DNA of 64,000 bases from NCBI GenBank assembly GCA_965655095.1, contig OZ296648.1, positions 154,628,001 through 154,692,000 on the forward strand, given 5' to 3'. Positions 24,555 to 60,257 of the stretch are shown piece after piece. Numbering within the stretch: the first letter of the stretch is position 1; the number at the start of each line of letters is the position of its first letter. Source of the stretch: Haplodiscus bocki. Its lineage: Eukaryota. The notes under the pieces were generated by a model. It searched no databases. It saw only the letters and a program-made list of their open reading frames with translations, and had not been told where the DNA came from. The position numbers and the translations under genes are program-made.

Positions 24555-25377
24555 GCTAAATTTATATTTTTTTCCGCCTGCTTTTTTGATAATTAAGAAA
24601 AATCATAATTTCTGCGCAGTGCGTTTCTTTTACGTTCCCTTGTCACCATGAACGGAAGACGATTATGAATTCGAAAAATTTTCTAACACAAAATAATAGA
24701 AGATTTGCCGTATAATGCAACTGATTTGGTAGGATTTCCAAATGGGTACGAAAACTGGGATTTTTCGAGAAAAAATTTGTTTTTGAACAAATGCGCTTTT
24801 CATTAAAATCGTGTTTTGCTCTCGTTACTTTCTGTTCCATATTGTAGGTATAGAAAATATTTCAATGGATAGTGCCGTCTTAAGTTTTCAGCATTATTTC
24901 AAATACACTGAAAATGACGTAAAAACGTGGGCGTGAGTTCCACCGTTCGGATTCAAAAGTCACACGCCATAGACGGATCCAATCCTAAACCTGCAGGTAC
25001 AAATGTTGAATCCGTATCAAACAATTGGGTCGGCTACCGCCAGCACATTTTCCGCTTTCCCCTTTTGGTAAAGATGCCTTTAAAGGAATCCAAGCGGTTT
25101 TTTTCAAAACACATTCTTTTGAGTGATGGCCAAAAAACCTCTTAGTTAACGTGAACATCTTCTGAAAAACAATATAATTTGATGTGTTTTCTACAGCAAA
25201 CTTGCTGCCGTCAGTGACTTTGAAGTAAGTCAATTCATTTTCGGAAAAAGCCGATCATTTTTTCAACAGAAAACTCCAATTTTGGAACGGTTGGAGAACT
25301 GTTACATTTTCAGCCGTATTCTACGCCAAATTTGCTATAATTAGTTTATGAGCGATTTTCAATTTCGGAATCGTCTT
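24555..25377. mobile_element. Foldback/MITE-like cassette in monomer 1 (right arm truncated at the monomer junction); representative of the internal monomers
   Basis: The left arm aagacgattatgaattc...tagaagatttgccgtataatgc...aaaactgggattttt is the inverted complement of the right arm aaaactccaattttgg...gtattctacgccaaatttgcta...tttcggaatcgtctt. Confidence 0.75.
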
Positions 25378-27616: not shown

Positions 27617-27705
27617 AAAATTACACGCCATGGACGGATCGAACCCTAAACTTGCAGGTTAATGTGTTAAAGCCGTATCAAACAAGAGGGTCAGCTACCG
27701 CCGGC
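27617..27705 (-). ncRNA. tRNA-like putative Pol III cassette (monomer 2)
   Basis: Same cassette with intact GGTTCGATCC, TAGCTGA at the A-box position, a possible D-stem GCTG/CGGC, and T4 downstream. Confidence 0.4.
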
Positions 27706-39700: not shown

Positions 39701-42700
39701 TACTCCTCCCTTTTGCTTTTTGTGGGCTTTTGGACAAACACTGGATGGCCACAATACAAACAGTATTGCTTCAGAAGCACAACTCATTGAAGACAAAAAA
39801 TATTGGTGTTTGAAATTACAAGACAAAATATTTTGCGTGGAAAGTACATAACGGGACTTTACTGTCTTTCTATTGATTTTGCAAATTGCGAGCAAGTGCA
39901 TGGGATCTAGATGGTCAGAATCCAACGAATAATCTTCGAAGAAGTGCTTTCAGTGAAAAAAATCAATCAAACTAATACAACTTTGAGACTGGAAATCCAA
40001 TAACTTGGCTTGGAAGGTATGTGGTTAAAATCCAGCATCTCAATTTTTCAAGAATCGAATTTGAGAATCAACAATTTTCGAACGCATTAAGATTGCGTAA
40101 TCTATTGACAAAACTGAGCATATTTGAGAGTATAAATTACCAGTTGGAGCTGAAAAAGTGATTTGCTGAGAGTGGGTTTGCACTAGTTTCGAGAGAGCGG
40201 GGGTAAAAAACAAATAGGAACCAATAGTGGGATTCATTAGGCGCTACGAATGGTTGAAAAACCAATTGGACTTTCGCAAAATTTTATTGCGTTGGAAACT
40301 ACAGTACAATCAAACGTTCAAAAATTTGAAACTCCGAAGCAATCAATGGTCTTCTGGTAAACTTTTTTGTATTTTCAAAAAATTGCAGTTTTTGGACCCG
40401 TCCCGAAACAAAAAATTCCGGATGCAATGAGCGTCACCATCTTGGAAAAGGTCGAAGAATAAGATGCGAAACATTGTGATAGTTGTGAGAAAACTGAACC
40501 TGAGTACTTGCATATTTGAGTCAAATGCTCCCACTACCACAAGTACTTGGAATCTAAGACTAAACAGTGATGCTCTCTCTAGCTTGAAGACAAGGGGTAG
40601 CAAAAACAGATAAAATAATCGACAAGCAGGTACCATTCTGATTCCCTCAAGCAATCAACCTTGCCCCATCGGTCAATCAAGGGCCCTTTGGGAAGAAAAA
40701 GTAAAATCTATATGCAATAAATTTGACTTAATGCAGAAAAGAAATCATCTGAAATATTGTGATTGCTTCGATTGGATAAGAACAAAATTTAGAATTTTTT
40801 CCGCCTTTTTTATGATAAGGAAGGAAAATCATCCTTTCAGCGCAGTCCATTGTTTTATATTCACCTGCTAGCATGTCCAGAAACCAATTCTGAATTTGAA
40901 AAACTAACACAAAAGAATAGCAAATTTGCCGTAAACCGCAAGTGATTTAGGATTTCTCAAATGGGTACGAAAACTGGGATTTTTTGAGAAATGTTTTCTT
41001 AAGAAATTCCGGTTTTGCTCATAATCGTACCTTGCTCTCGTTACTTTTTGTCCCATATTGTAAGAATAGAAAACATTTCAATGGATAGTGCCGTCTTAAG
41101 TTTTCAGCATTATTTCAAATACACTGAAAATGACGTAAAAACGTGGGCGTGAGTTCCACCGTTCGGATTCAAAAGTCACACGCCATAGACGGATCCAATC
41201 CTAAACCTGCAGGTACAAATGTTGAATCCGTATCAAACAATTGGGTCGGCTACCGCCAGCACATTTTCCGCTTTCCCCTTTTGGTAAAGATGCCTTTAAA
41301 GGAATCCAAGCGGTTTTTTTCAAAACACATTCTTTTGAGTGATGGCCAAAAAACCTCTTAGTTAACGTGAACATCTTCTGAAAAACAATATAATTTGATG
41401 TGTTTTCTACAGCAAACTTGCTGCCGTCAGTGACTTTGAAGTAAGTCAATTCATTTTCGGAAAAAGCCGATCATTTTTTCAACAGAAAACTCCAATTTTG
41501 GAACGGTTGGAGAACTGTTACATTTTCAGCCGTATTCTACGCCAAATTTGCTATAATTAGTTTATGAGCGATTTTCAATTTCGGAATCGTCTTAAGAGAA
41601 CGAGTTCACGGTAAAAAGAGAAAGGGACAGATATCTCGTTTACCAAGAAACGTGGTGCAGGTCAAGGGGAACAAGACAGAAATACTTTAAGCAACGCACT
41701 CAAATGGGGAAAAGTACATAAAGAGTCGGTGAATGAAGTTCTCTAGCTCATTGATTTTGAGACAGTGGATCATAGAACCCGGAAAAATGTGCAGAAATTC
41801 TCTCATCAGTGACTTTTGAAGAGATTGGACGCATGTGTTGAGCGCAGAGAGCCCCTGGAATTATAGGAAGAGCTGTATTCTTATAAAATTGTAAGCGAAA
41901 AACGGCGACATTTGTCAAAATAGGCATTTGAAGAAACTGATAAGCTAGCAATTTGAGACTTGTTAACTCATTTTTTGAATCAAGTTAAATTTTTGTTTCT
42001 AAACTTCTGTTTCAATGCGCCTGACTTTGGAGCTAAAAAAACTTCTAAAACAAGCATGTTTACCGAAGTCCGGGAGGGCCACAGAGTGATTTGAAGTAGA
42101 TTTGGTATCGCTATTCTTGCTGCCAGAGACTCAATACTTCTAATGAGGTTTATCTGATTATTTTTTGTCGAAAGAGCATTGAGAAAATTACTCTTTCAAA
42201 GAAACTGATTTATCAATTTATCACATCATAATGTAACAAAAAACCTTTGCATTCGAGAGTCCTTGTGGTTTTTTTCTAACAAAAACTTAAGGTTTGATAA
42301 AATCCGGCTCAAGTTTACATGCAAGGAATGTATTTAGCTGGGTTTCCCGGCTACTCCTCCCTTTTGCCTCTTTTGTTGGCATTTGGACAAGCACTGGATG
42401 GTCATAATACAAGCAGTATTGTTTCAGAAAAACAACTCCGACAAGACATAGAAAAACGGTTTTCCAAACTGCAAGACAAGATTTTGTACGTGGAAAGAAA
42501 ATAACGGGACTTCACTGCCTTTCTGTTGATTTTGCAAATTGCGAGCAACCGACTGGGATCTAGATGGTCAGAATCCAACGAATAATCTTCGAAGAAGTGC
42601 TTTCAGTGAAAAAAATCAATCAAACTAATACAACTTTGAAACTGGAAATCCAAAAACTTGGCTTGGAAGGTATGTGGTTAAAATCCAGCATCTCACTTTT

Positions 42701-44239
42701 CTGGGATTTTGTATAAGCGCCCGATGGCGGCAATCCCACTGGTGTTTTTGAGGACTCAAAATCACAAAATATTTCTCCTCCATTTTGCTGCTGAATGTTT
42801 AGGAAGCTTGCTAGCTGCAAACAACGAAAAATTGAACAAGTGTTTGCCAAAAACTGCAAGTTTTGATTATCATAAAAGAAATTAAAGATAGGCCGGTTGA
42901 CGATGCACATTCCTGTGCTCATTCAGATTATGTGGAAAAACTGAAAATTATGCGACCGATTCTCAACCAAAAAATGATTTGATCGAATTCAGCAATAATA
43001 ACACTGAGTCAAATGCTCAATGCTTTGAGAACTACGTGATATATCAAAGCTTTCAAGATTAGAATTTGAGAATCAACAATTTTCGGACGCGACGCAGGGT
43101 CATAAATTTGAAATAGCGAAAATTAGGTTGCGTAATCCAATGACAGAACTGAGCATATTTGAGAGTTTAAATTACCATTTGGATTCGACGAAGCTAATAG
43201 CGGAGAGCAAGTTCAGACTAGTTTCGAGGGAGCGGGGTTAAATTGCTATAGGAACCAATAGTGGGATTCATTAAGCGCTGGGAATGGTTGAAAAACCAAT
43301 TGGACTTTCGCACAATTTTTTTGCGTTGAAAACTACAAAACAATCAAACGTCCAAATTTTTTGAAACTCTGAAGCAATCAATGGTCTACTGCTAAACTTT
43401 TTTGTTTTTTGAAAAAACTGCAGTTTTTGGACCTGTCTGGAAACAAAAAATTCCGGATGCAATGAGCGTCACCATCTTGGAAAAGGTCGAAGAATAAGAT
43501 GCGAAACATTGTGATAGTTGTGAGAAAACTGAACCTGAGTACTTGCATATTCGAATCGGTGCTCCCACCACTACAAGTCTATGGAATCTAAGACTAAACA
43601 GTGACGCACTCTCTAGCTTGGAGGACAAGGGAAAGTAAAAACAGATAAAACAAAAGACAAACAGGTACCATTCTGATTCACTCAAGCAATCAGCCTTGCC
43701 CCGTCGGTCAATCAAGGGCCGTTTGGGAAGTGAAAGTAAAATCTATTTGCAATAAATTTGACTGATTGCAGGAAAAAATTTTTTCTGAAGTATTGTGATT
43801 GCTGCGATTTGAAGAGAGCAAAACTTATATTTTTTTCCGCCTTTTTTTATGATAAGGAAGGAAAATCATCCTTTCAGCGCGGTCCGTTTTTTTAAATTCG
43901 TTTGCCAGCATTACCAGAAAACAATTCTGAATTCGAAAAACTTTTAACACAAAATAATAGCAAATTTGCTGTAAAATGCAATTGATTTAGTAGGATTTCT
44001 CAAATGGGTACGAAAACTGGGACTTTTAGAGAAAAAATCATTTTTGGAAGAAATCTGGTTTTCCTTATTGGAAGAAATCTGGTTTTCCTTAAAAATGAAC
44101 ATTGCTCTCGTTACTTTTTTGTCCAGTTTCTAAGAATAAAAATATTTTATTGGGCAGCGCCGTTTTGAGTTTTCAGGAAATTTTCCAATTCATTAAAAGT
44201 GACTTAAACTTGCGGGCGTGAACTTTACCATTCAGATGC

Positions 44240-44329
44240 AAAAATTACACGCCGTAGACGGATCGAACCCTAAACCTACAGGTTCGAAAGTTGAAGCCGT
44301 ATCCAACGAGAAGGTAGGCTACCGCCGGC
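44240..44329 (-). ncRNA. tRNA-like putative Pol III cassette (monomer 8)
   Basis: Same cassette with intact GGTTCGATCC and a T5 run. Confidence 0.4.
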
Positions 44330-47300
44330 ACATTCTCCGCTTTCCCATTTTGGTAAAGATGCCTTTAAAGGAAAGCAAGCGGTTTTTTTCAAAACACTCT
44401 CTTCTGAGTGAGGGCCAAAAAAGCTCATAATTTAACCGAACGTTTTCTTTAAGGACAATATAAAGCATTGTTTTTTATAAAAAGTTGCCACAATCAATGA
44501 TTTTTAAGCAATTCAGTTTATTTTTTAAAAAAAATCGATCAATTTATTAACAGAAAACCCCAATTTTTGTACGGTTTGTGAAATGTTACACCTTCATTCG
44601 TATTCTACGCCAAACTTCTATAATTAGTTGATGGGAGCTTTTCATTATCAGAATCGTCTTAAGAGAACGAGTTCAAGGTAAAAAAAAGAAAAAGACAGAT
44701 CTCTCGTATAGCAAGAAAGATGATGCAGGTCAAGAAGAACAAGAGACATAAACTTGAAGCAAAGCACTCAAATGGGAAAAAATACATAAAGAGTCCGTGA
44801 ACGAACTTTTCGAACTCCATGAATTTGAGACAGTGGACACTGGAACCCTAAAAAATTGTGCAGAAGTTCTCTCATCAGTGACTTTTGAAGAGATTGAACG
44901 AAGTTGTTGAGCGCAAAGAGCCCCTGGAATCATAGAAAAAACTATCTTTTTAAAAAATCGAAAACGAAAATCGGAGACAATTGTCAAATTTAGCATTTGG
45001 AAAAACTGTTAGGCAAGCAACTTCAAATTTGTTAGCTCATTTTTTGAGTCCAGTGAAACTTTTTTTAATAAACTTCTGTTTTAATGCGCCTGACTTTGAT
45101 GCAAAAAACTAATTCTAAAACAAATATGTTTACCGAATTCAGAGAAGGCCACAGAGTGATTTGAAATAGATTTGGTATCGCTATTGTTACTGCCAGACAC
45201 TCAGTACTATTACTGAGGTTTTTCCTATTAAATCTTGTCGAACGACAATTGAGAACGTTACTTTTTCAGACAAACTGCTTTGAAAAAATATCACAGAAAA
45301 AAGTGACAAAAAACCTTTGCACAGGAAAGTCTTTGTTGTTTTTTTTCCTAACAAATTACAAAATTTGGTAGAATGCAGCTCAAGTTTACCTGCAAGGAAA
45401 GTATTTAGCTGGGTTTCACGGCTATTCCTCCCTTTTGTCTTGTTGTGGGCTTTTGGACAAGCAGTGGATCTCCACAATACAAGCAGTATGGTTTCAGAAA
45501 CGCAACTTCTAGAAGACATAAAAGAACGGTATTTGAAATCACAAGACAAGATAGTTTGCGTGGGAAGTACATAACGGGACACTACTGCCTTTCTGTTGAT
45601 TTTGCAAATTGCTAGCAATTGCCTGGGATCTAGATGGTCAGATCGCAACGAATAATTTTCGAAAAAGTGTTTTTAGTTTGAAAAAAAGGCCAGAAAAACT
45701 AACAAAAATTTGAGACTAGAAGTCCATAGATTTGGCTTGGAATGCATGTGACTAAAGGTCCAGCATCTCATTTTTCTGGCATTTTCTATAAGCGCCTGAT
45801 GGCGGCAATCCAATTGGTGTTTTTTGGGAACCCAGAATCACAAAATTATTGGTCTCCATTTTGCTGCTGAACCTTTAGGAAGCTTGCTAGCAGCACACAT
45901 TGGAAAATTGAAAAAGTAAATGCTGAAAACTGCAACTTTTGAATGTTGTAAAAGAAATTAAGTATAGGCCGTATAGGCCAGTTGATGATGCACATTCCTG
46001 TTGTTTTTCAGACTTTGTGGACCAACTGGTGTTTATGAAACCGATTCTCAGTGACAAAAAAATGATTTGATCCAATTCAGCAATTCTCACAATACGTCAA
46101 ACACTCAGAGCGTTGAGAATTACGTGACATTTCAAAAGCTTCGAGAAAGGAAACTGAGAGTCGACAATTTTTGGACGGGACGAAGGGTCATCATTTTGAA
46201 AAAACTATCATCAAGGTGCATATTCTAATCACAAATTCAAGCATATTTGAGAGAATCAATTACCAGTTGGTGTCAAAAAAGCGAATGGCGAAGAGTGGGT
46301 GTGGACTAGATTTGAGTGAGTGAGAGCAAAGAAGACATTGGACCAATGGTACGAGTCTTTAAGCGCTACGAATGTTTAAAAAACTGATTGGACTTTCGCT
46401 AAAAGATATTGCGTTGAAAGCTACAAACTAATCGAACGTCCCAACTTCTGATATTTCGCAGCATTCAATGGTCTGCTCGTAAAAGTTTTATGTTTTGGAA
46501 AAATTGCAGTTCTTGGCCCCTTCAGGAATCAAAATAGTTTTGGACGCAATGAGTGGTCACAATCTTGGAAAACAGCCGAAAATAAGATGCGATTAAATTT
46601 GACAATTATGAGGAAACTGAATCTGAGTACTTGCATATTTGAATTGAAGCTCCCAACGCCACAATCGCTAAAATCTAAGACTAAACATTGACGCTTTTAG
46701 CATGGGGGACAAAAGATAGCAAAAACAGATAAAATAATCGACAAGCAGGTACCATTCTGATTCTCTCAAGCAATCAGCCTTGCCCTGTTGGTCAATCAGT
46801 GGCCGTTTGGGAAGAAAAAGTAAAATCTATATGCAATAAATTTGACTGAATGCCGAAAAAAATCATCTGAAATATTGTGATTGCTTCGATTGGAAAAGAA
46901 CAAAATTTAGAATTTTTTCCGCCTTTTTTATGATAAGGAAGGAAAATCATCCTTTCAGCGCGAACCGTTTGTTTTACATTCACCTGCTAGCATGTCCAGA
47001 AACCAATTCTGAATTTGAAAAACTTTTTAACACAAAATATTAGCAAATTTGCCGTAAACTGCAAGTGAATTAGGATTTCTCAAATTGGTACGAAAACTGG
47101 GATTTTTTGAGAAAAAATGTTTTTTTTTAAGAAATTCCGGTTTTGCTTATAATCGTACCTTGCTCTGGTTACTTTCTGTCCCTTATTGTAAGAATAGAAA
47201 ACATTTCAATGGATAGTGCCGTCTTAAGTTTTCAGCATTATTTCAAATTCACTGAAAATGACGTAAAAATGTGGGCGTGAGTTCCACCGTTCGGATTCAA

Positions 47301-48734
47301 AAGTCACACGCCATAGACGGATCCAACCCTAAACCTGCAGGTACAAATGTTGAATCCGTATCAAACATTTGGGTCGGCTACCGCCAGCACAATTTCCGCT
47401 TTCCCCTTTTGGTAAAGATGCCTTTAAAGGAATCCAAGCGCTTTTTTTCAAAACACACTTTTGAGTGATGGCCAAAAAACCTCCTAGTTAACGTGAACAT
47501 CTTCTGAAAAACAATATAATTTGATGTGCTTTCTACAGCAAACTTGCTGCCGTCAGTGACTTTGAAGTAAGTCAATTCATTTTCGGAAAAAGCCGATCAT
47601 TTTTTCAACAGAAAACTCCAATTTTGGAACGGTTGGAGAACTGTTACATTTTCAGCCGTATTCTACGCCAAATTTGCTATAATTAGTTTATGAGCGATTT
47701 TCAATTTCGGAATCGTCTTAAGAGAACGAGTTCACGGTAAAAAGAGAAAGGGACAGATATCTCGTTTACCAAGAAACGTGGTGCAGGTCAAGGGGAACAA
47801 GACAGAAATACTTTAGGCAACGCACTCAAATGGGGAAAAGTACATAAAGAGTCGGTGAATGAAGTTCTCGAGCTCATTGATTTTGAGACAGTGGATCATA
47901 GAACCCGAAAAAATGTGCAGAAGTTCTCTCATCAGTGACTTTGAAGACATTGGACGAAGTTGTCGACCGCAAAGAGCCCCGGGATTTATGGGAAAAGCTG
48001 TCTTCCTAGAAAATCGAAAGCGAAAAACGGAGACAACTGTCGCAATTAGCATTTGAAAAAAACTGATTAGCTAACAACTTGAAACTTGTTAACACTTTTT
48101 TGAGTCAAGTTAACCTTTTTGTAAGTAATCTTCCGTTTTAATGCGCCTGATTTTGAGGCAAAAAATTACTTCTAAAACAAGTATGTTTTACTGAATTCAG
48201 AGAGGGCCACAGATTGATTTGAAATAGATTTGGTATCGCTTATGTTGCTGCCAAACACTCAGTACTACTAGTGAAGTTTTTCTGATTAGTTGTTGTCGAA
48301 CGAGCATTGAGATTAACTTTCTTTCAAACAAATTGATTTAAAAAAATATCGCTTAACAAAGTGAAAAAAAACCTTTGCACTCGGAAATCCTTGTTGTTTT
48401 TTTCTTATAAAACTACAAAATTTGATGAAATATGGTTCAAGTTAACGTGCAAGGAACGTATTTAGCTGGGTTTCACGGCGATTCCTCCCCTTTTGTCTCG
48501 TTGTGGGCTTTTGGACAAGCAGTGGATTTCCACAGTACAAGCAGTATGGTTTCAGAAACGGAACTTCTAGAAAACAAAAAGAACGGTTTTTGAAATCACA
48601 AGACAAGACAGTTTGCGTGGGAAGTACATAACGGGACAATACTGCCTTTCTGTTGATTTTGCAAATTGCGAGCAACCGACTGGGATCTAGATGGTCAGTA
48701 CCGAACGAATAATCTTCGAAAAAGAGCTGTCAGT

Positions 48735-51700
48735 GAAAAAAGCCAGAAAAACTAACACAAGTTTGAGACTAGGCGTCCATATAATTAGTTCAGCTGCTAT
48801 AAAACTGAAAATCCAGCATCCCAAGTTTTTGGGATTTTGAATGAGCATCTGATGGCGGCAATCCAGTTTGTTTTTTGAGAACTCAAAATCACAGCACAAT
48901 TGGCCTCCATTTTGCCGCTGAACGTTTAGGAATCTTGCTACCAGCAAACAACGAAAAATTGTACAAGTGCTTGCCAAAAACTGCAAGTTTTGAAAATTAT
49001 AAAAGAAATTAAGTAAAAGCCGGTTGACGAGGCACGTTCCTGTTTTTTCTTCAGATTCTGTGGAAAAACTGGAATTTATGAAACCGGTTCTCAATAAAGA
49101 AAAATGATTTGATGCAATTCAGAACAATTTACATTGCGTCAAACATCTAGAGCCTTGAGAATTAAGTGAAATTTCAAAATATTCAAGGATGGAATATATG
49201 AGTTAACTTTTTTCGGACCCGACGAAGGGTCATCTTTCTGAAAAAGAGAATATTAAGGTGCGTATTCTAATGACAAATCTGAGCACAATTGAGAGTATCA
49301 ATTACTAGTTGGAGTCGAAGAAGTGAATAGCGGAGAGTGAGTTCGGAGTAGCTACGAGCGAGCGGGAGTAGAAAAGACATAGTAACCAATGGTGCGAGTC
49401 ATTAAGCGCTACGGTTAAAAACCAATTGGACTTTCGAAAAATGACTTTGCGTTGAAAATTGCCAACTAATGAAACGTCCAATTTTTTTGATATTTCGCAG
49501 CATTCAATGGTTTACTCGTTTACGAAGTTTTGGAAAAAATTCAGTTCTTGGACCCTTCAGGAATCAACTTTTTTTGGACGCAATGAGTGGTCACCATCTT
49601 GGAAAACAGCCGAAAATAGGATGCGATTAAATGTGATCGTGAAGAAACTGAATCTGAATACTTGCATATTTGAACCGAAGCTCGCACCACCACAAGTAAT
49701 TGGAATCTACGACTAAACAGTGACGCTCTTTCTAGCTTGGGGGACAAAGGAAAGTAAAAACAGATGAAGTAAACAACAAGGAGGTGCCATTCAGGTTCAC
49801 TCTAGCAATCAGCTTTGCCCAGTCCGTCAATCACGGGTCGTTCGCAAAGAAAAAGTAAAATCTATACGCTTTAAGTTTAACTGATTGCCGAAGAAAATTC
49901 ATTTGAAAGATTGTGATTGTTTCGATTTGAAAATAGCTAAATTGATAATTTCCGCTAACATTTTTGATAAAGGAAGAAAATCATCATTTCTCCGCGATGC
50001 GTTTCTTTCACGTTCCCTTGCAAGCATGGCCGGAAGACGATTCTGAATTGGAGTGTTTGACACCAATTGATAGCAAATTTGCCGTATAATGCGATTGAAT
50101 TAGTAAGATTTCTCAAATGGGCATAAACTTGGGGTTTTTCTCAAAATCGTACTTTAATCTTGAAACTTTTTGTCCCATACTGTAAAATTAGAAAAAATTT
50201 CAACGGATGGTGCCGTTTTAAATTTTCAGGCAATTTGCCAATTCACTGAAAGTGACGTTAATTTGAAAGAGTGAAATTTACCTTTCGGATGCAAAAATTA
50301 CACGCCATAGAGGGAGCGAACCCTCAACCTGCAGGTTAATATGTTGCAGCCTTATCAAGCAAGAGAGTCGGCTACCTCCGGCACATTTTCCTCTTCCCCA
50401 TTTTGGTAAAGATGCCTCTAAAAGAATGCAAGCGGTCTTTTTCCAAAACACTTTCCTTTGCGTGAGGGCTAAAAAACCTCACAATTAACGTGAACATTTG
50501 TTGAAAAAGTACAATTTGATATGCGTTCTACAGCAAACCTGCTGCCATCAGTGACTTTAAAACAAGTCAATGTGTTTATCGAAAAATCCCATCTATTTTT
50601 TCAACAGAAAACCCCAAATTTCTAAGGTTTGGAGAAATCCTACAATTTCAGTCCTATTCTACGCCAAATTTGCTTGATTTTGTTTTTGAGAAGTTTTCAA
50701 ATTCAGACTGGACTTAGTTGGACAATTTCAAGGTAAAAAGAAAAGGACAGATACCTCATTTATCAAAAAAAATGGTGCAGGTCAAGGGGGAACAAGAGAG
50801 AAATGTTTGAAGCAAAGCACTCAAATGGGGAAAAGTACAAAGAGTCGTTTCAAGAACTTTTCCGAGCTCGTTGAATTTGAGACAGTGGGTCCCAGAACCC
50901 GAACAAATAGTGCGGAGTTCTGCCACCAGTAACTTTTGAAAAGAGATTGGACGAAGTTGTCGAGCGCAAAGAGCCCCTGGAACCATAGGAAAAGCTACCT
51001 TCTTATAAAATTGAGAGCGAAAAGCGGAGACAACTGTCAAAATTAGCATTTGAAAAAACTGATAATCTAGCAAAATGAAACTTGTCAACTCATTTTTTGA
51101 GTCAAGTTAAACTTTTTGTGTCTGAACTTCTGTTTCAATGCGCCTGAAATTGGAGCTAAAACACTTCAAAAACAGGTCTGTTTACCGAATTCGGGGATAA
51201 ACACCGACTGATTTGAAATAGATTTGGTATCGCTATTGTTGCTGCCAGACACTCAGTACTTTTACTGAGGTTTTTCCGATTAATTCTTGTCGAACGACAA
51301 TTGAGAACGTTACTTTTTCGTCGAACGAGCATTGAGATTTTTAATCTTGCAAACAAACTGATTTTTAAAATTATCACATAACAAAGTGACAAAAAACCTA
51401 TGCTCTCGAAAGTCCTTGAGGCTTTTTTTAAAAAAAAACTACAAGTTTTGATAAAACGCGGCTCAAGTTTACCTGCAAGGAATGAATTTAGCTGGGTTTC
51501 AGAGCTAGTCCTACCTTTTGTCTTTTCTTTGGCATTTGGAAAAGCACTGGATGGCCACAATACAACCAGTTTTTTTTTCAGAAGAACAACATAACAACTC
51601 CAAGGAGACATAAAAGAATGGTTACTGAAATAACAAGACAAAATATTTTGCGTGGAAAGTACATAACGGGACTTCACTGAATTTCTGTCGGTTCTGCATA

Positions 51701-54700
51701 ATGCGAGCAACTGAATGGGGTCTAGATGGCCAGAAGCCAACGAATATTCTTCGACAAAACGCTTTTACTGAAAAAAAGCCAGAAAATCATATACAAAGTT
51801 GAGACTACTAGTCCATATATTTGGCGTGGAAATTATGTGACTGAAAATCCAGCATCTTAATTTTTGGGGATTTCGAATGAGCGCCTGATGACGGCAATCC
51901 AATTTGTTTTTTTTCTGGGAACTCAATCACAAATTAATTAGCCTTAATTTTGCTGCTCAATGTTGAGGAAGCTTGCGCAGCAAACAACGGAAAATTGAAC
52001 AAGTACTTGCCAAAAACTGCAAGTTTTGAAAATTATAAAAGAAATTAAGCAAAAGCCGGTTGATCATCCACATTCCCGTTTTCTTTCAGACTATGTGAAA
52101 AAACAGGAGGTTGTGAACTCGATTCTCAATGAAAATGATTTGATCGAAATCGCCAATATTCACATTGCGTCAAACACTCAGAGCGTTGAAAATTACGTGA
52201 CATTTCAAAATTTTCAAGAAAGGAAATTGAGAGTCGACAAATTTCGGACGCGACAAAGGGTCATCTTTTTCAAAAAGCGAACATTCAGGTGCGTATTCGA
52301 ATGACAAATTTAAGCGTATTTGAGAGTATCAGTTACCAGTTGGAGTCGAAAAAGTGAAAAGCGAAGAGTGGGTTCGGACTAGTTTTGAGTGAGCGGGAGA
52401 GAAAAACATAGAAACCAATGGTGCGAGTCGATAAGCGCTAAGAATGGTTAAAAAACCAATTGCAATTACGCAAAAGGATATTGCGTTGAAAACTACAAAC
52501 TAATCAAACGTCCAGGAATTCGAAATTTCGACGCATTCATTGGTCTACTGGTAAATTCTCTTGTTTTAAAAAAGTTGCAGTTTTTAGACCCTTCAGGAAT
52601 CAATTTTTTTTGGACGCAATGTGTAGTCACAATCTTAGAAAAAAGCCGAAAGTAAGATGCGAATCATAGTGACAGTTCTGAGAAGACTGTATCTCAGTAG
52701 TTGCATATTCGAATCGAAGCTCCTACTACAACAAGTTCCTGGAATCGGAGACTAAACGGTGACGCCCTCTCTATCTTGAGGGACGAGGGAAAGTAAAAAC
52801 AGATGAAGTAAACAACAAGGAGGTGTCATTCAGGTTCACTCTAGCAATCAGCTTTGCCCAGTCCGTCAATCACGAGCCGTTTGCTAAGAAAAAGTAAAAT
52901 CTATACCTCTGAAGTTTGACTGATTGCCGAATAAAAGTCATTTGATACATTGTGATTGTTTCGACTTGATAATAGCTAGAACTACATTCTCCGTTTACCT
53001 TTTTGATATGGAAAATCATCAATTCTGCGCGATGCGTTTCTTTTACGTTTCCTTGTCAGCATGGCCGGCAGGCGATTCTGAATTGAAAATCAAAACAATT
53101 TATAACAAATTTGACGTATAATACGACCAATTTATTTAGTAGGGTTTTTCAAGTGGGTACGAAAAATGTGGTTTCTCAAAAAAGGATCTCGTTTTTTTTT
53201 CAAAAAATCCGATTTTTCTCAAAATCGCACTTTAATATTGTTACTTTTTGTTCCATACTGTAAAATTAGAATTTAATTTAAGGGCTGGTACCGTTTTGAA
53301 TTTTTAGGAAATTTGCCAACTCTCTGAGAGTGACGTAAATATACGGGCGTAAAAATTACCTTTCGGATGCAAAAATTACACGCCATGGACGTACCGAACC
53401 CTCAATTTTCAGGCTCATATGTTGAAGCCTTATCTTGCAAGAGGATCGGCCACTGCTTGGAAGTTTTTCGTATTCCCATTTTGGATTCTCCCATTCTCAT
53501 TATGTCTTCAAATGAATCCAAGCGTTTTTTTCGAAACACTCTTTTGAGTGATGGCCAAAAAACCTCTGAGTTAACGTGAACATCTTTTGAAAAACAATAT
53601 AATTTGATGTGCTTTCTACAGCAAACTTGCTGCCGTCAATGACTTTGAAGTAAGTCAATTTATTTTCGGAAAAAGCCGATCATTTTTTCAACAGAAAACT
53701 CCAATTTTGGAACGGTTGGAGAACTGTTACATTTTCAGCCGTATTCTACGCCAAATTTGCTATAATTAGTTTATGAGCGATTTTCAATTTCGGAATCGTC
53801 TTAAGAGAACGAGTTCACGGTAAAAAGAGAAAGGGACAGATATCTCGTTTACCAAGAAACGTGGTGCAGGTCAAAGGGAACAAGACAGAAATACTTTAAG
53901 CAACGCACTCAAATGGGGAAAAGTACATGAAGAGTCGGTGAATGAAGTTCTGGAGCTCATTGATTTTGAGACAGTGGATCATAGAACCCGAAAAAATGTG
54001 CAGAAGTTCTCTCATCAGTCACTTTGAAGACATTGGACGAAGTTGTCGACCGCAAAGAGCCCCTGAAATCATCGGAAAAGCTGTCTTCCTAAAAAATCGA
54101 AAGCGAAAAACGGAGACAACTGTCGCAATTAGCTTTTGAAAAAAAACTGATTAGCTAGCAACTTGAAACTTGTTAACTCATTTTCTGAGTCAAGTTAAAC
54201 TTTTTGTTTGTAAACTTCCATTTCAATGCGCCTGATTTTGAGGCAAAAAATTACTTCTAAAACAAGTATGTTTTACTGAATTCAGAGAGGGCCACAGATT
54301 GATTTGAAATAGATTTGGTATCGCTTATGTTGCTGCCAAACACTCAGTACTACTAGTGAAGTTTTTCTGATTAGTTGTTGTCGAACGAGCATTGAGATTA
54401 ACTTTCTTTCAAACAAATTGATTTAAAAAAATATCGTCTAACAAAGTGAAAAAAAACCTTTGCACTCGGAAATCCTTGTTGTTTTTTTCTTATAAAACTA
54501 CAAAATTTGATGAAATAAGGCTCAAGTTAACGTGCAAGGAAAGTATTCAGCTGGGTTTCACGGCTATTCCTCCCTTTTGTTTTGTCGGGGCTTTTGGACA
54601 AGCAGTGGATCCCCACAAAACAAGCAGTAAGGTTTCAGGAACACAACTTCTAGAAGACATAAAAGAATGATTTTTGAAATTACAATAAAAGATAGTTTGC

Positions 54701-57700
54701 GTGGGAAGTGCATAACGGGACGTTACTGCCTTTCTGTTGATTTTGCAAATTGCGAACAATTGGCTGAGATCTAGATGGTCAGAACCCAACGAATAATCTT
54801 CGAAAATTGCTCCCAGTGAAAAAAGCCAGAAAAACTAACACAAGTTTGAGACTAGGCGTCCATATAAATAGTTCAGCTGCTATAAAACTGAAAATCCAGC
54901 ATCCCAAGTTTTTGGGATTTTGAATGAGCGTCTGATGGCAGCAATCCAGTTTGTGTTTTTTGAGAACTCGAAATCACAGCACAATTGGCCTCCATTTTGC
55001 CGCTGAACGTTTAGGAATCTTGCTACCAGCAAACAACGAAAAATTGAACAAGTGCTTGCCAAAAACTGCAAGTTTTGAAAATTATAAAAGAAATTAAGGA
55101 AAAGCCGGTTGGCGAGGCACGTTCCTGTTTTTTCTTCAGATTCTGTGGAAAAACTGGAATTTATGAAACCGGTTCTCAATGAAGAAAAACGATTTGATGC
55201 AATTCAGAACAATTTACATTGCGTCAAACATCTAGAGCCTTGAGAATTAAGTGAAATTTCAAAATATTCAAGGATGGAATATATGAGTTAACTTTTTTCG
55301 GACCCGACGAAGGGTCATCTTTCTGAAAAAGAGAATATTAAGGTGCGTATTCTAATGACAAATCTGAGCACAATTGAGAGTATCAATTACTAGTTGGAGT
55401 CGAAGAAGTGAATAGCGGAGAGTGAGTTCGGAGTAGCTACGAGCGAGCGGGAGTAGAAAAGACATAGTAACCAATGGTGCGAGTCATTAAGCGCTACGGT
55501 TAAAAACCAATTGGACTTTCGAAAAATGACTTCGCGTTGAAAATTGCCAACTAATGAAACGTCCAATTTTTTTGATATTTCGCAGCATTCAATGGTTTAC
55601 TCGTTTACGAAGTTTTGGAAAAAATTCAGTTCTTGGACCCTTCAGGAATCAACTTTTTTTGGACGCAATGAGTGGTCACCATCTTGGAAAACAGCCGAAA
55701 ATAGGATGCGATTAAATGTGATCGTGAAGAAACTGAATCTGAATACTTGCATATTTGAACCGAAGCTCGCACCACCACAAGTAATTGGAATCTACGACTA
55801 AACAGTGACGCTCTTTCTAGCTTGGGGGACAAAGGAAAGTAAAAACAGATGAAGTAAACACCAAGGAGGTGCCATTCAGGTTCACTCTAGCAATCAGCTT
55901 TGCCCAGTCCGTCAATCACGGGTCGTTCGCAAAGAAAAAGTAAAATCTATACGCTTTAAGTTTAACTGATTGCCGAAGAAAATTCATTTGAAAGATTGTG
56001 ATTGTTTCGATTTAAAAATAGCTAAATTGATAATTTCCGCTAACATTTTTGATAAAGGAAGAAAATCATCATTTCTCCGCGATGCGTTTCTTTCACGTTC
56101 CCTTGCAAGCATGGCCGGAAGACGATTCTGAATTGGAGTGTTTGACACCAATTGATAGCAAATTTGCCGTATAATGCGATTGAATTAGTAAGATTTCTCA
56201 AATGGGCATAAACTTGGGGTTTTTCTCAAAATCGTACTTTAATCTTGAAACTTTTTGTCCCATACTGTAAAATTAGAAAAAATTTCAACGGATGGTGCCG
56301 TTTTAAATTTTCAGGCAATTTGCCAATTCACTGAAAGTGACGTTAATTTGAAAGAGTGAAATTTACCTTTCGGATGCAAAAATTACACGCCATAGAGGGA
56401 GCGAACCCTCAACCTGCAGGTTAATATGTTGCAGCCTTATCAAGCAAGAGAGTCGGCTACCTCCGGCACATTTTCCTCTTCCCCATTTTGGTAAAGATGC
56501 CTCTAAAAGAATGCAAGCGGTCTTTTTCCAAAACACTTTCCTTTGCGTGAGGGCTAAAAAACCTCACAATTAACGTGAACATTTGTTGAAAAAGTACAAT
56601 TTGATATGCGTTCTACAGCAAACCTGCTGCCATCAGTGACTTTAAAACAAGTCAATGTGTTTATCGAAAAATCCCATCTATTTTTTCAACAGAAAACCCC
56701 AAATTTCTAAGGTTTGGAGAAATCCTACAATTTCAGTCCTATTCTACGCCAAATTTGCTTGATTTTGTTTTTGAGAAGTTTTCAAATTCAGACTGGACTT
56801 AGTTGGACAATTTCAAGGTAAAAAGAAAAGGACAGATACCTCATTTATCAAAAAAAATGGTGCAGGTCAAGGGGGAACAAGAGAGAAATGTTTGAAGCAA
56901 AGCACTCAAATGGGGAAAAGTACAAAGAGTCGTTTCAAGAACTTTTCCGAGCTCGTTGAATTTGAGACAGTGGGTCCCAGAACCCGAACAAATAGTGCGG
57001 AGTTCTGCCACCAGTAACTTTTGAAAAGAGATTGGACGAAGTTGTCGAGCGCAAAGAGCCCCTGGAACCATAGGAAAAGCTACCTTCTTATAAAATTGAG
57101 AGCGAAAAGCGGAGACAACTGTCAAAATTAGCATTTGAAAAAACTGATAATCTAGCAAAATGAAACTTGTCAACTCATTTTTTGAGTCAAGTTAAACTTT
57201 TTGTGTCTGAACTTCTGTTTCAATGCGCCTGAAATTGGAGCTAAAACACTTCAAAAACAGGTCTGTTTACCGAATTCGGGGATAAACACCGACTGATTTG
57301 AAATAGATTTGGTATCGCTATTGTTGCTGCCAGACACTCAGTACTTTTACTGAGGTTTTTCCGATTAATTCTTGTCGAACGACAATTGAGAACGTTACTT
57401 TTTCGTCGAACGAGCATTGAGATTTTTAATCTTGCAAACAAACTGATTTTTAAAATTATCACATAACAAAGTGACAAAAAACCTATGCTCTCGAAAGTCC
57501 TTGAGGCTTTTTTTAAAAAAAAACTACAAGTTTTGATAAAACGCGGCTCAAGTTTACCTGCAAGGAATGAATTTAGCTGGGTTTCAGAGCTAGTCCTACC
57601 TTTTGTCTTTTCTTTGGCATTTGGAAAAGCACTGGATGGCCACAATACAACCAGTTTTTTTTTCAGAAGAACAACATAACAACTCCAAGGAGACATAAAA

Positions 57701-58877
57701 GAATGGTTACTGAAATAACAAGACAAAATATTTTGCGTGGAAAGTACATAACGGGACTTCACTGAATTTCTGTCGGTTCTGCATAATGCGAGCAACTGAA
57801 TGGGGTCTAGATGGCCAGAAGCCAACGAATATTCTTCGACAAAACGCTTTTACTGAAAAAAAGCCAGAAAATCATATACAAAGTTGAGACTACTAGTCCA
57901 TATATTTGGCGTGGAAATTATGTGACTGAAAATCCAGCATCTTAATTTTTGGGGATTTCGAATGAGCGCCTGATGACGGCAATCCAATTTGTTTTTTTTC
58001 TGGGAACTCAATCACAAATTAATTAGCCTTAATTTTGCTGCTCAATGTTGAGGAAGCTTGCGCAGCAAACAACGGAAAATTGAACAAGTACTTGCCAAAA
58101 ACTGCAAGTTTTGAAAATTATAAAAGAAATTAAGCAAAAGCCGGTTGATCATCCACATTCCCGTTTTCTTTCAGACTATGTGAAAAAACAGGAGGTTGTG
58201 AACTCGATTCTCAATGAAAATGATTTGATCGAAATCGCCAATATTCACATTGCGTCAAACACTCAGAGCGTTGAAAATTACGTGACATTTCAAAATTTTC
58301 AAGAAAGGAAATTGAGAGTCGACAAATTTCGGACGCGACAAAGGGTCATCTTTTTCAAAAAGCGAACATTCAGGTGCGTATTCGAATGACAAATTTAAGC
58401 GTATTTGAGAGTATCAGTTACCAGTTGGAGTCGAAAAAGTGAAAAGCGAAGAGTGGGTTCGGACTAGTTTTGAGTGAGCGGGAGAGAAAAACATAGAAAC
58501 CAATGGTGCGAGTCGATAAGCGCTAAGAATGGTTAAAAAACCAATTGCAATTACGCAAAAGGATATTGCGTTGAAAACTACAAACTAATCAAACGTCCAG
58601 GAATTCGAAATTTCGACGCATTCATTGGTCTACTGGTAAATTTTCTTGTTTTAAAAAGTTGCAGTTTTTAGACCCTTCAGGAATCAATTTTTTTTTGGAC
58701 GCAATGTGTAGTCACAATCTTAGAAAAAAGCCGAAAGTAAGATGCGAATCATAGTGACAGTTCTGAGGAGACTGTATCTCAGTAGTTGCATATTCGAATC
58801 GAAGCTCCTACTACAAGTTCCTGGAATCGGAGACTAAACGGTGACGCTCTCTCTATCTTGAGGGACGAGGGAAAGTA
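48735..58877 (+). repeat. Higher-order (dimer) duplication, period 6,085 bp
   Basis: Identical ORF translations at offset 6085: 49459/55544, 49541/55626, 50756/56841, 51156/57241, 51400/57485 and 52026/58111. Confidence 0.95.
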
Positions 58878-59040
58878 GAAAAAAGAGTAAAGTAAACAAC
58901 AAGCAGGTACCATTTAGGTTCACTCTAACAATAAACCTTGCCCAGTCGGTCAATCACAGGCCGTTGGCGAAGAGAATGTAAGTTCTATATTGCCGACTAA
59001 AATTTATTTGAAACCTTGTGATTGTTTCCATTTGAAAATA

Positions 59041-59958
59041 GCTAAATTTATATTATATTCCGCCTATATTTATGATAAGGAAAGAAAATTATCCTTTCAG
59101 CGCGGTGCGTTTGTTTCACGTTCACTTGCCGGCACGGCCGGAAGACAATTCTGAATTTCAAATTTTTTCAACACAAAATTGAAGTAAGTTTGCCCTATAA
59201 TTCGCCTCAAATAGTAGGATTTCTCAAATGGGTACGAAAGTTGGGGTTTTCCAAAAAAAAGTTGGGTGTTGCTTGAAAAAATCCTATTTTTTTTTCAAAA
59301 TCGTACTTTGCTCTTGTTACTTCGTCCGAAATTGCAAAAGTAGAAAATAATTTATTGCATAAAGCCGTTTTACTTTTTCAGGAAATTTTGCGAATTATCT
59401 AAAAGTGACTTGAAATTGCGGGCGTGAATTTTACCTTTCGGATGCAAAAATTACACGCCATAGACGGATCGAACCCTCAAACTGCAGGTTAATATGTTGC
59501 AGCCTTATCAAGCAAGAGGGTCGGCTACCGCCGGCACATTTTCCGCTTTCCCATTTTGGTAAAGATGCCTTTAAAAGAATCCAAGCGCTTTTTTTTCAAA
59601 ACATTATTTTTTGAGTGAGGGCCAAAAAACCTCACAATTAACGTGAACGTTTTTTCAAAAAACAATATAACTTGATATGCTTTCTACAGCAAATTTGCTA
59701 CCTTCAGTGATTTTGAAACAATTCATTTTTCAAAGAATCTCATTTTTTTTCAACAGAAAACCCCAATTTTTGAACGTTTTGAGAAATCTTAATTTGTCGT
59801 ATTCTACGGCAAATTTGCTATCAAATTTGTAATGTCCTGGTCAGAACCAGAGACAAGTGTCAATTGGCAAGTGAGCGTGAAAAAACGTCGGATTTGATCG
59901 TTTTGAGTGAATTATTTTCCTTCCAAATTGTAAATATGCCCGGAAAATATCAATTGTA
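59041..59958. mobile_element. Complete ~920-bp foldback/MITE-like element with ~200-bp imperfect TIRs, ending the array
   Basis: The right arm ...ttctacggcaaatttgcta...tggcaagtgagcgtgaaaaaacg...attttccttcc...ccggaaaatatcaatt is inverted to the left-arm consensus gctaaattkata..ttccgcc...ggaaggaaaatcatcc...cgtttttttacgttcacttgcca...tagcaaatttgccgta. Confidence 0.75.
59446..59535 (-). ncRNA. tRNA-like or SINE-head-like putative Pol III cassette (monomer 13)
   Basis: Minus strand: GCCGGCGG TAGCCGA ccctcttgcttgata AGGC tgcaac atattaa cctgc agttt gag GGTTCGATCC gtctatGGCG tgtaa TTTTT. This gives an A-box-like motif, a B-box and a T5 terminator. The T-stem and acceptor stem are imperfect. Confidence 0.45.
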
Positions 59959-60257
59959 GAGAAATAGATATAACACATGCATGCATATGTTTAATTGATA
60001 ATTGCATGTCACTCTATGGCGATATATTGTGGCCACATATTCGCAAGCCAAAATACCTTGGTGACAACTGGGGCTCTTGCATAACTTTTACACCGATTTT
60101 CGAGGATCAATAAGAAATCTTTTTTACATGCTAATGGTTTTAAAATGTAGATATTTTGATTTGCTTGCAAGACATGTGCGCATTGAAAATTAACAAGAAC
60201 ATGTTCCAGTAAACTGGAGATGGGACTCCAATTTTTCAATCCCACCCGGGTCGACCA

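What the first reader, a model, noticed from the sequence alone, without database searches (positions are those of the whole stretch)
59446..59535. tRNA-like Pol III cassette at the centre of each foldback element: a possible tandem array of small-RNA genes or TFIIIC sites
Seen: a well-conserved, relatively GC-rich part of the cassette reads on the minus strand (consensus) GCCGGCGG-TAGCCGA...CGGC...TTAA-CCTGC-AGGTT-TAGGG-TTCGATCC...GGCG-tgtaa-TTTTT. The B-box is intact in monomers 2, 8 and 13, reads GGTTCGATTC in 5, and is altered in the others (monomer 3 lacks the cassette). Established: A box plus B box plus T-run defines Pol III type-2 units, and the 3' spacing matches a tRNA anticodon loop, variable loop and T loop. 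Inference: a SINE-like head carried within a TIR element and amplified 12-fold could yield an ~85-nt RNA or act as a periodic chromatin boundary. It is not a canonical tRNA (long D loop, weak T-stem).
Basis: partly seen in the sequence, partly recalled or inferred. Interest (0 to 1): 0.7.

Follow-up and report, generated by a model that had tools for sequence, protein, structure and literature searches.

The report
Transposon end fused to tRNA relic
The "tRNA-like Pol III cassette" is a dead composite, the hairpin end of a very abundant rolling-circle-type transposon butted against a decayed 3' piece of a tRNA-Arg gene, copied 12 times only because it sits inside a 3-kb tandem repeat.

Summary
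A 90-nt GC-rich segment recurs 12 times on the minus strand, once per ~3.07-kb monomer of a tandem array (window 22368-59819). The B box GGTTCGATCC is exact in monomers 2, 8 and 13.

The cassette has two unrelated origins.
That element has thousands of copies genome-wide and HINE/Helentron-like ends. None of 37 dispersed copies examined carries the rest of the cassette.
- The remainder (59440-59509) is a decayed copy of positions 18-73 plus 14 nt of 3' trailer of this genome's tRNA-Arg(TCG) genes. nhmmer gives E = 5e-6 for the best copy, and 0 of 3000 shuffles reach the consensus score. The B box and T-run are therefore real by descent.

Nothing supports function.
- ARAGORN and Rfam find no tRNA, even at E <= 10.
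- There is no covariation.
- The B box is less conserved than the average 10-mer of the monomer (40th percentile).
- The tRNA-like part occurs nowhere else in the genome.
- No RNA data exist.

Verdict: an ordinary tRNA pseudogene fragment beside a transposon end, passively amplified in a macrosatellite. Low interest.

The parts
22368..59819 (.). Tandem array (macrosatellite) of ~3.07-kb monomers: 13 monomers, 12 with the cassette. Pairwise identity is 75-90%. A recent 6-kb two-monomer duplication makes monomers 10/12 97.0% and 11/13 94.8% identical.
   Evidence: Self-BLAST; monomer lengths; identity matrix
59446..59535 (-). The other copies are at 24955-25044, 27617-27705, 32410-32499, 35448-35536, 38515-38604, 41171-41260, 44240-44329, 47299-47388, 50293-50382, 53372-53461 and 56378-56467.
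59510..59952 (-). Right arm: a full-length copy (consensus positions 1-495) of a dispersed ~495-bp HINE/Helentron-like non-autonomous element. In internal monomers it is cut at consensus position ~99 by the array junction.
   Evidence: Alignment with 8 and then 29 dispersed copies; BLAST of the consensus against the window
59510..59535 (-). 3' terminal hairpin (GCCGG-N6-CCGAC, consensus CCGGC) plus the tail CCTCTTGCTT of the right-arm element. It matches the family consensus at 22 of 26 positions.
   Evidence: the identity count is read directly from the consensus and the sequence
59454..59509 (-). Decayed relic of tRNA-Arg(TCG) positions 18-73: the 3' part of the D arm, the anticodon arm, the variable loop, the T arm (with a 1-nt deletion in the loop) and the 3' acceptor strand.
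   Evidence: nhmmer with profiles built from this genome's own tRNA-Arg genes; shuffle control; BLAST to the tRNA loci
59466..59475 (-). B box / T-loop motif GGTTCGATCC. It is exact in 3 of 12 copies. Mean pairwise identity is 0.788, the 40th percentile of 10-nt windows in the monomer.
59489..59495 (-). Position equivalent to the anticodon loop. It reads ATATTAA here. The copy at 44240-44329 still reads TTTCGAA, with the TCG anticodon.
   Evidence: HMM alignments
59440..59453 (-). 3' trailer with the T-run. It is homologous to the trailer gtaacttttgaattc of the real tRNA-Arg genes. Copy 38509-38522 keeps TAACTTTTGAAT exactly.
   Evidence: Flanks of 23 real tRNA-Arg genes; flank-inclusive HMM alignments
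59421..59459 (-). Imperfect hairpin GGCGTGTAATTTT / AAAATTCACGCC. It uses the tRNA 3' end and the T-run as one arm.
   Evidence: Read from the sequence and the alignment
59304..59439 (.). Centre sequence between the left arm and the tRNA relic. It is found only in this array and is the least conserved part of the foldback (0.768, 6th percentile).
59054..59303 (+). Left arm: consensus positions 1-257 of the same HINE-like family, in the orientation opposite to the right arm. It lacks a recognisable 3' half.

Best explanation
The cassette is a non-functional composite of two unrelated pieces that happen to lie end to end.

1. The 5' 26 nt are the 3' terminus (stem-loop plus a T-rich tail) of a very abundant ~495-bp non-autonomous element whose ends look like those of Helentron-derived HINEs. 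This is shown.
2. Directly after that exact terminus comes a decayed fragment of a tRNA-Arg(UCG) gene, positions 18-73 plus its natural 3' trailer and T-run. This is shown by profile homology to the genome's own tRNA-Arg genes.
3. Together with an inverted partial copy of the same transposon and other repeat fragments, this junction lay in a ~3-kb stretch of non-coding DNA. That stretch was tandemly duplicated, with one breakpoint inside the right-hand transposon copy, and expanded to 13 monomers. The structure is shown. Unequal crossing-over or replication slippage as the cause is inferred.
4. Since then the copies have drifted apart at the same rate as the rest of the monomer. This is shown.

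The B box, loop spacing and terminator are inherited from the tRNA gene. The A-box-like TAGCCGA and the apparent D stem are accidents of the transposon hairpin. The most likely present activity is none, which is inferred because no expression data exist.
For: Transposon end:
- 8 of 8 and then 29 of 29 dispersed copies align up to the same terminus ...GCCGGTGGTAGCCGGCCGTCTTGTT. Their flanks differ from there on.
- The first look found 7710 candidates for this family.
- In the array the terminus falls at 59510.
- The family has HINE-like architecture when compared with the description in PMC4067079. An 11-nt subterminal inverted repeat ATTTTCCGCCC / GGGCGGAAAAT lies 5 nt from the 5' end and 38 nt from the 3' end. 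A 5-bp palindrome lies 9 nt from the 3' end. Ts flank both boundaries. Two of 29 copies form head-to-tail junctions.

tRNA relic:
- A profile of this genome's tRNA-Arg(TCG) genes hits the cassettes as the top matches in the window, with a best score of 16.1 bits and E = 4e-4. Lys and Thr profiles hit nothing there.
- With gene flanks included, the best copy scores 21.6 bits (E = 5e-6) and 7 copies have E < 0.01. The alignment always runs from tRNA position 18 into the trailer.
- 118 kb of other sequence from this genome gives at most 6.7 and 9.0 bits.
- The majority consensus scores 12.2 and 15.6 bits, against a maximum of 6.7 and 7.3 in 3000 dinucleotide shuffles.

No sign of function:
- ARAGORN finds 0 tRNAs. 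Rfam finds nothing at gathering thresholds or at E <= 10 on the three copies with an intact B box.
- The RNAalifold covariation term is +0.13 with 0 compensatory pairs.
- On the homology-based cloverleaf 70% of cells pair, equal to the shuffle mean.
- Conservation percentiles are 40 for the B box and 89 for the whole cassette.
- The single-copy fold has z = -1.57.

Locus-specific:
- The cassette and the 209-nt centre occur only in this array.
- The monomers are non-coding. There is no Pfam hit, no third-codon-position excess, and the longest ORF is open only in two sister monomers.
Against: - Three copies keep a B box that fits GGTTCGANNC, with a T4-5 run 12-15 nt after the tRNA 3' end and an A-box-like TAGCCGA about 51 nt upstream. 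Pol III transcription or TFIIIC binding cannot be excluded from sequence alone.
- The cassette is slightly better conserved than the monomer average (+1.2 sd).
- At relaxed ARAGORN thresholds more copies than shuffles get a call: 3 of 12 against 2.2% at 70%, and 6 of 12 against 7.2% at 60%.
- Only three tRNA families (Arg-TCG, Lys-TTT, Thr) could be compared, so another isoacceptor might match better.
- The tRNA 5' half is not found on the far side of the transposon in the last, complete copy. A simple insertion into an intact tRNA gene is therefore not demonstrated.
- The autonomous partner of the transposon family was not identified.
Confidence: 0.8

Rival explanations
1. Chimeric but working Pol III unit or TFIIIC site. 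The transposon hairpin supplies an A-box-like element, and the tRNA relic supplies the B box and terminator. At least the three copies with an intact B box would then be transcribed into an ~85-nt RNA, or would bind TFIIIC as extra-TFIIIC-type sites spaced 3 kb or multiples of it apart.
For: - The B box is exact in 3 of 12 copies.
- T4-5 runs follow in all copies.
- TAGCCGA matches the first 5 specified positions of the A-box consensus TRGCNNAGTGG (from general knowledge), and the A-to-B spacing of ~51 nt is within the tolerated range.
- The cassette is mildly above average in conservation.
Against: - Nine of 12 B boxes are mutated, and the B box is at the 40th percentile of conservation.
- The last four A-box positions do not match.
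- In the transposon consensus the A-box-like motif reads TAGCCGG, so its fit is an accident of one substitution.
- There is no structure, no covariation and no covariance-model hit.
- It occurs at a single locus.
- There are no expression data either way.
Confidence: 0.07
2. Composite mobile element. A HINE copy that sat next to (or in) a tRNA-Arg gene read through its own 3' end and carried the tRNA fragment and trailer to this locus, ending at the next hairpin (59421-59459). The tRNA relic would then have arrived as transduced cargo rather than being resident DNA. This concerns origin only and is compatible with the main explanation.
For: - The junction is exactly at the transposon's 3' terminus.
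- The tRNA 5' half is absent on the other side of the element in the complete last copy.
- A hairpin follows the relic directly.
- Rolling-circle elements are known to capture 3' flanks (general knowledge).
- Head-to-tail junctions in 2 of 29 copies suggest that termination sometimes fails.
Against: - No second copy of the composite and no source junction exist anywhere in the genome. A pattern search for the junction finds only the array copies plus chance partial matches.
- The centre is unique.
- The tRNA-Arg array spacers contain no HINE sequence.
Confidence: 0.15
3. Pure chance. The segment has no tRNA ancestry, and the B-box-like 10-mer and T-run are coincidences in AT-rich repeat DNA.
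For: - One ancestral event only.
- A <=1-mismatch B box is expected ~1.7 times per 64 kb.
- Rfam and ARAGORN find nothing.
Against: - Homology extends over 70 nt, including the non-structural trailer. It is specific to the Arg profile and exceeds 3000 of 3000 shuffles and 118 kb of background.
- Different copies retain different tRNA-matching states: TCG in copy 44240-44329, GATAAGGC in five copies, and TAACTTTTGAAT in copy 38515-38604.
Confidence: 0.04

Closest known systems
tRNA pseudogene / tRNA gene fragment (relic of a tandemly arrayed tRNA-Arg(UCG) gene family)
   Same: It is collinear with tRNA positions 18-73 and the 3' trailer. It has a B box, the anticodon-loop position with TCG kept in one copy, and a T-run terminator.
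   Different: It lacks positions 1-17. The anticodon stem pairs in 48% of cells and the T stem in 60%. The T loop has a 1-nt deletion. It sits on a different chromosome-scale contig (C1) from the real gene array (C7).
HINE / DINE-1-type non-autonomous Helentrons (Thomas, Vadnagara and Pritham 2014, PMC4067079)
   Same: The flanking ~495-bp family has subterminal inverted repeats, a short 3' palindrome a few nt from the end, T-rich boundaries, no visible target-site duplication, very high copy number and occasional head-to-tail copies.
   Different: The 5' subTIR starts 5 nt from the terminus, against 2-4 in the mite families. No central tandem repeats were seen. The autonomous partner was not identified here.
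tRNA-derived SINEs
   Same: A tRNA-related segment with a B box lies next to unrelated sequence and is present in many copies.
   Different: The copies are tandem at one locus and not dispersed. There is no tRNA 5' half or true A box, and no SINE body or tail. The multiplicity comes from segmental duplication.
Macrosatellites (kilobase-unit tandem arrays such as D4Z4 or DXZ4) and extra-TFIIIC (ETC) sites / tDNA insulators
   Same: A ~3-kb unit is repeated about 13 times. Isolated B boxes can in principle bind TFIIIC.
   Different: No coding or conserved element stands out in the unit. Most B boxes are mutated. No chromatin or binding data exist.

Membership tests
Functional tRNA gene (Rfam RF00005 / cloverleaf) | Scores as a tRNA with a covariance model or ARAGORN | tested here: not met
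   ARAGORN finds 0 genes in the window. Rfam finds 0 at gathering thresholds and 0 at E <= 10 on the copies at 59380-59600, 44215-44360 and 27590-27735. Real tRNA-Arg genes of this genome score 68.7 bits with the same model.
Functional tRNA gene (Rfam RF00005 / cloverleaf) | Four-arm cloverleaf maintained, with compensatory changes between copies | tested here: not met
   The homology-based cloverleaf pairs in 70% of cells, equal to the shuffle mean. The anticodon stem pairs in 48% and the T stem in 60%. RNAalifold finds 0 compensatory pairs.
tRNA-derived sequence (descent from a tRNA gene) | Significant collinear sequence similarity to bona fide tRNA genes of the same genome | tested here: met
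   For positions 18-73 plus the trailer, E = 5e-6 for the best copy and 7 copies have E < 0.01. 0 of 3000 shuffles reach the consensus score. This is not met for positions 1-17, which are transposon sequence.
Pol III type-2 transcription unit | B box GGTTCGANNCC | tested here: met
   It is exact as GGTTCGATCC in 3 of 12 copies. The other 9 carry 1-3 changes.
Pol III type-2 transcription unit | A box TRGCNNAGTGG about 30-60 nt upstream of the B box | tested here: inconclusive
   TAGCCGACCCT fits 5 of 9 specified positions at about 51 nt upstream. The motif belongs to the transposon hairpin, whose consensus reads TAGCCGG.
Pol III type-2 transcription unit | Run of >=4 T shortly downstream | tested here: met
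   T4-T5 in all 12 copies. It is inherited from the tRNA-Arg trailer.
Pol III type-2 transcription unit | Transcript or Pol III/TFIIIC occupancy | not testable with these tools
   No RNA run holds the stretch. The 4 holders come from one study and behave as genomic DNA contigs.
tRNA-derived SINE | Dispersed copies at many loci | tested here: not met
   All 12 matches of the cassette and of the 209-nt centre lie in this array.
Foldback / TIR transposon carrying the cassette | The unit of arms plus centre recurs elsewhere with the same internal sequence | tested here: not met
   The arms are separate copies of a ~495-bp family that occurs singly elsewhere. The centre is unique.
HINE (non-autonomous Helentron), for the flanking element | 11-15-bp subterminal inverted repeats, the 3' one roughly 38-60 bp from the end | tested here: met
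   ATTTTCCGCCC lies 5 nt from the 5' end. GGGCGGAAAAT starts 38 nt from the 3' end. The criteria are from PMC4067079.
HINE (non-autonomous Helentron), for the flanking element | Short palindrome 8-35 bp from the 3' terminus | tested here: met
   GCCGG-TGGTAG-CCGGC is followed by a 9-nt tail, CGTCTTGTT.
HINE (non-autonomous Helentron), for the flanking element | T-rich / TT insertion sites with Ts at both boundaries and no target-site duplication | tested here: met
   Positions -5, -4, -2 and -1 are T in 20-23 of 26 copies. Positions +1 and +2 are T in 26-27 of 28 copies. No duplication is visible. No empty site was examined.
HINE (non-autonomous Helentron), for the flanking element | Autonomous Helentron (Rep/helicase/endonuclease) with the same termini | not tested
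   The genome has 147 Helitron_like_N matches with open frames up to 2780 aa.
Macrosatellite | Head-to-tail array of a kilobase-scale unit | tested here: met
   13 monomers of ~3.07 kb at 75-97% identity.

The most novel reading that the evidence does not exclude
The accidental fusion of a transposon hairpin (pseudo-A box) with a tRNA-Arg 3' fragment (B box plus terminator) created a new Pol III-competent or TFIIIC-binding unit. Tandem amplification then turned it into a periodic 3-kb array of TFIIIC sites or small-RNA genes. This would be a macrosatellite with built-in tDNA-like boundary elements, of which three copies are still intact.
Probability: 0.05. Interest if true: 0.6.

Novelty: new member of a known kind. 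Interest (0 to 1): 0.15.

Why it matters
Mostly as a caution. A sequence that shows an A box, a B box, tRNA-like spacing and a T-run, repeated 12 times, can still be a dead mosaic. Here the promoter halves come from two unrelated sources and the repetition comes from segmental duplication.

Two by-products are useful for annotating this genome:
- a very abundant ~495-bp HINE/Helentron-like family with clearly defined ends;
- evidence that fragments of the tandemly arrayed tRNA-Arg(UCG) genes have been scattered to other chromosomes.

If the small residual chance of Pol III or TFIIIC activity were real, the array would be a natural example of a promoter born from a transposon end plus a gene relic.

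Tried and rejected
- Tandem Repeats Finder saw no array because its period limit is 500. Self-BLAST was needed.
- Extension of the left arm into the centre: the global-local alignment to the family consensus is good only to position ~257 and looks random beyond it. I do not claim that the centre is a diverged 3' half.
- Whether the transposon's 3' region is itself related to the tRNA-Arg 5' flank and 5' half. They share the 11-mer AAATGGGAAAG and GCCG..TAGCC, and two copies align there. I rejected this as chance. 38 dispersed copies give no hit to that part of the profile, and the tRNA-Arg array spacers share nothing with the transposon.
- A source junction (transposon end followed by GATAAGGC) elsewhere in the genome: only chance partial matches were found.
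- The tRNA 5' half beyond the transposon's 5' end (59953 onwards): no profile hit.
- Coding potential of the monomer: no Pfam hit, no codon-position signal, and the ORF is not kept open.
- Expression: no RNA runs. The four runs found are DNA-like contigs from one study, probably the assembly's own sample. They do confirm two cassette variants, and their contigs break at 59511, the inferred transposon terminus.
- Earlier scan notes searched by words (tRNA, Helentron and others): nothing.
- Literature search for Helentron plus tRNA plus tandem: nothing specific to such junctions.
- The N run at 3956-4117 was left untouched.

Full report
**Setting.** The window is G000:C1:154628001-154692000 of a 1.5-Gb eukaryotic genome with about 37% G+C. 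Self-BLAST shows a head-to-tail array of ~3.07-kb monomers from about 22368 to 59819. There are 13 monomers. One is truncated (27711-29775) and lacks the segment in question. Monomers are 75-90% identical. A recent 6-kb two-monomer duplication makes monomers 10/12 97.0% and 11/13 94.8% identical. The monomer is non-coding. Its ORFs have no Pfam match and no third-position excess of substitutions, and the longest ORF is open only in two sister monomers.

**Observation.** The B-box 10-mer GGTTCGATCC is exact in monomers 2, 8 and 13 and reads GGTTCGATTC in monomer 5. The GC-rich 5' 15-mer is present in 11 copies with <=3 mismatches. A whole-genome search finds 12 copies of the segment, all in this array. 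The 12 copies are one evolutionary event, however, and the segment is only mildly better conserved than the monomer as a whole: 0.833 against 0.803 mean pairwise column identity, the 89th percentile.

**First component: a transposon terminus.**
- Searching the genome with a whole monomer showed that the two inverted arms are copies of a dispersed repeat with thousands of first-look candidates.
- Eight and then 29 dispersed copies were aligned with their flanks. The family is ~495 bp long.
- It starts with TTATTATTTTCCGCCCATAT... and ends with ...GGGCGGAAAATATGCCGGTGGTAGCCGGCCGTCTTGTT. Beyond these points the flanks are unrelated between copies.
- The 11-nt ATTTTCCGCCC near the 5' end is the inverse complement of GGGCGGAAAAT, which starts 38 nt from the 3' end.
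- A 5-bp palindrome (GCCGG/CCGGC, 6-nt loop) lies 9 nt from the 3' end.
- Both boundaries are T-rich, and no target-site duplication is visible.
- Two of 29 copies are joined head to tail with another copy.
- These features fit the description of HINEs, the non-autonomous derivatives of Helentrons, in PMC4067079.
- The genome also encodes at least 147 Helitron_like_N matches with open frames up to 2780 aa. I could not fetch them to compare termini.
- In the array the right-hand copy of this family lies on the minus strand at 59510-59952. It is complete only in the last monomer. Internal monomers are cut at consensus position ~99 by the array junction.
They match the family consensus at 22 of 26 positions.
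- The left arm (59054-59303, plus strand) is positions 1-257 of the same family.

**Second component: a tRNA-Arg relic.**
- A scan of the genome with the Rfam tRNA model returned large tandem arrays of real tRNA genes. One is a tRNA-Arg(TCG) array on contig C7 with ~566-bp spacing.
- A profile HMM built from those Arg genes hits the cassettes on the minus strand as the best matches in the whole window, with 16.1 bits and E = 4e-4 for the best copy. Profiles of the Lys and Thr arrays hit nothing there.
- When 30 nt of 5' flank and 40 nt of 3' flank of the real genes are included, the best copy reaches 21.6 bits (E = 5e-6) and seven copies have E < 0.01.
- In every copy the alignment runs from tRNA position 18 (GATAAGGC) through the anticodon arm, variable loop, T arm and acceptor 3' strand, and then 14 nt into the trailer gtaacttttgaattc.
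- Background sequence from the same genome (118 kb) gives at most 6.7 and 9.0 bits.
- The majority consensus of the 12 copies scores 12.2 and 15.6 bits, against a maximum of 6.7 and 7.3 in 3000 dinucleotide shuffles.
- Different copies keep different tRNA-matching states, as expected for independent decay from a more tRNA-like ancestor. The copy at 44240-44329 keeps the TCG anticodon, five copies keep GATAAGGC, and the copy at 38515-38604 keeps TAACTTTTGAAT.
- The relic begins exactly where the transposon ends (59509/59510).

**What the cassette is not.**
- It is not a tRNA. ARAGORN finds none. Rfam finds nothing at gathering thresholds or at E <= 10 on each of the three copies with an intact B box.
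- At strongly relaxed ARAGORN thresholds, calls are somewhat more frequent than in shuffles: 3 of 12 against 2.2%, and 6 of 12 against 7.2%. This is what a relic with a T-loop motif would give.
- The single-sequence fold is unremarkable, with z = -1.57.
- RNAalifold finds no covariation. On a cloverleaf drawn by homology to tRNA-Arg, 70% of cells pair, exactly the shuffle mean. The anticodon stem pairs in 48% and the T stem in 60%.
- The B box itself is at the 40th percentile of conservation among 10-nt windows of the monomer. The tRNA relic is at the 87th percentile and the transposon end at the 58th.
- It is not a SINE head and not cargo of a mobile foldback element. The cassette and the 209-nt centre exist only in this array, and none of 37 dispersed transposon copies is followed by tRNA-like sequence.
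- The pattern of the junction occurs elsewhere only as chance partial matches.

**How the junction arose.** This remains open. The transposon end is precise, which points to a transposition event rather than a random break. However, the tRNA 5' half is not on the other side of the element in the complete last copy. Either the target was already a fragment, or the tRNA piece was carried along by read-through past the transposon's 3' end, possibly terminating at the hairpin at 59421-59459. No second copy exists to test this.

**Expression.** This could not be addressed. The only public runs that hold the stretch are four DNA-like contig sets from one study. Laid on 58900-60100, they confirm the sequence and a second cassette variant that matches the sister monomers. 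Their contigs break at 59511, the inferred transposon terminus.

**Verdict.** The "cassette" is a dead composite of a HINE-like transposon end and a tRNA-Arg pseudogene fragment, multiplied by tandem duplication of a 3-kb non-coding segment. A residual possibility (about 5-7%) remains that the three copies with an intact B box bind TFIIIC or are transcribed.

Noticed in passing
G000 contigs C7:23.68-23.78 Mb, C4:107.93-108.14 Mb, C11:32.11-32.18 Mb (loci L063-L090): There are large tandem arrays of real tRNA genes: Arg(TCG) at ~566-bp spacing on C7, Lys(TTT) at ~480-bp spacing on C4, and Thr(TGT/AGT) at ~757-bp spacing on C11. The Lys array includes variants read as Arg(TCT) and as a TTA 'stop' anticodon. 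The first look counted ~138,000 tRNA-like candidates.
   Followed up: partly
G000, e.g. C3:133.75-134.31 Mb, C9:18.63-18.98 Mb, C23:0.10-0.31 Mb: There are 147 matches to Helitron_like_N, many in open frames of 2,000-2,780 aa and clustered at ~15-kb spacing. These look like tandem or clustered autonomous rolling-circle elements and could include the partner of the HINE-like family.
   Followed up: no
window 45082-45106 (+) and 45147-45165 (-), and the same monomer positions (~721-805) in other monomers: Weak matches to the tRNA-Arg profile recur here, to positions 20-48 on one strand and 54-72 on the other, with E of 0.4-3 each. The sequences read GCGCCTGACTTTGATGCAAAA and CTCTGTGGCC. They may be further, more decayed tRNA-Arg debris or chance.
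   Followed up: partly
window 58487-58972 (monomer positions 1988-2473): A second dispersed repeat lies inside the monomer, with 68-70% matches at C1:21048032, C2:48304767, C5:106040245 and elsewhere. The monomer is therefore a mosaic of several repeat families.
   Followed up: no
L059 and L060 (G000:C1:174.58 Mb, C2:20.74 Mb): Head-to-tail junctions of two HINE-like copies (...GTCTTGTT directly followed by TATTA/TAATA...), as expected if rolling-circle termination sometimes fails.
   Followed up: partly
window ~24800-25200 versus ~41015-41415: About 300 nt around the cassette are identical between monomers 1 and 7, although these monomers are only 77.6% identical overall. This suggests patchy gene conversion or mosaic duplication within the array.
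   Followed up: no
G000:C3:78942409-78948668: Three HINE-like 3' ends with the same flank (…CCTCTTGCTTGATATGAC) lie within 6 kb. This may be another small tandem duplication that includes a copy of the family.
   Followed up: no
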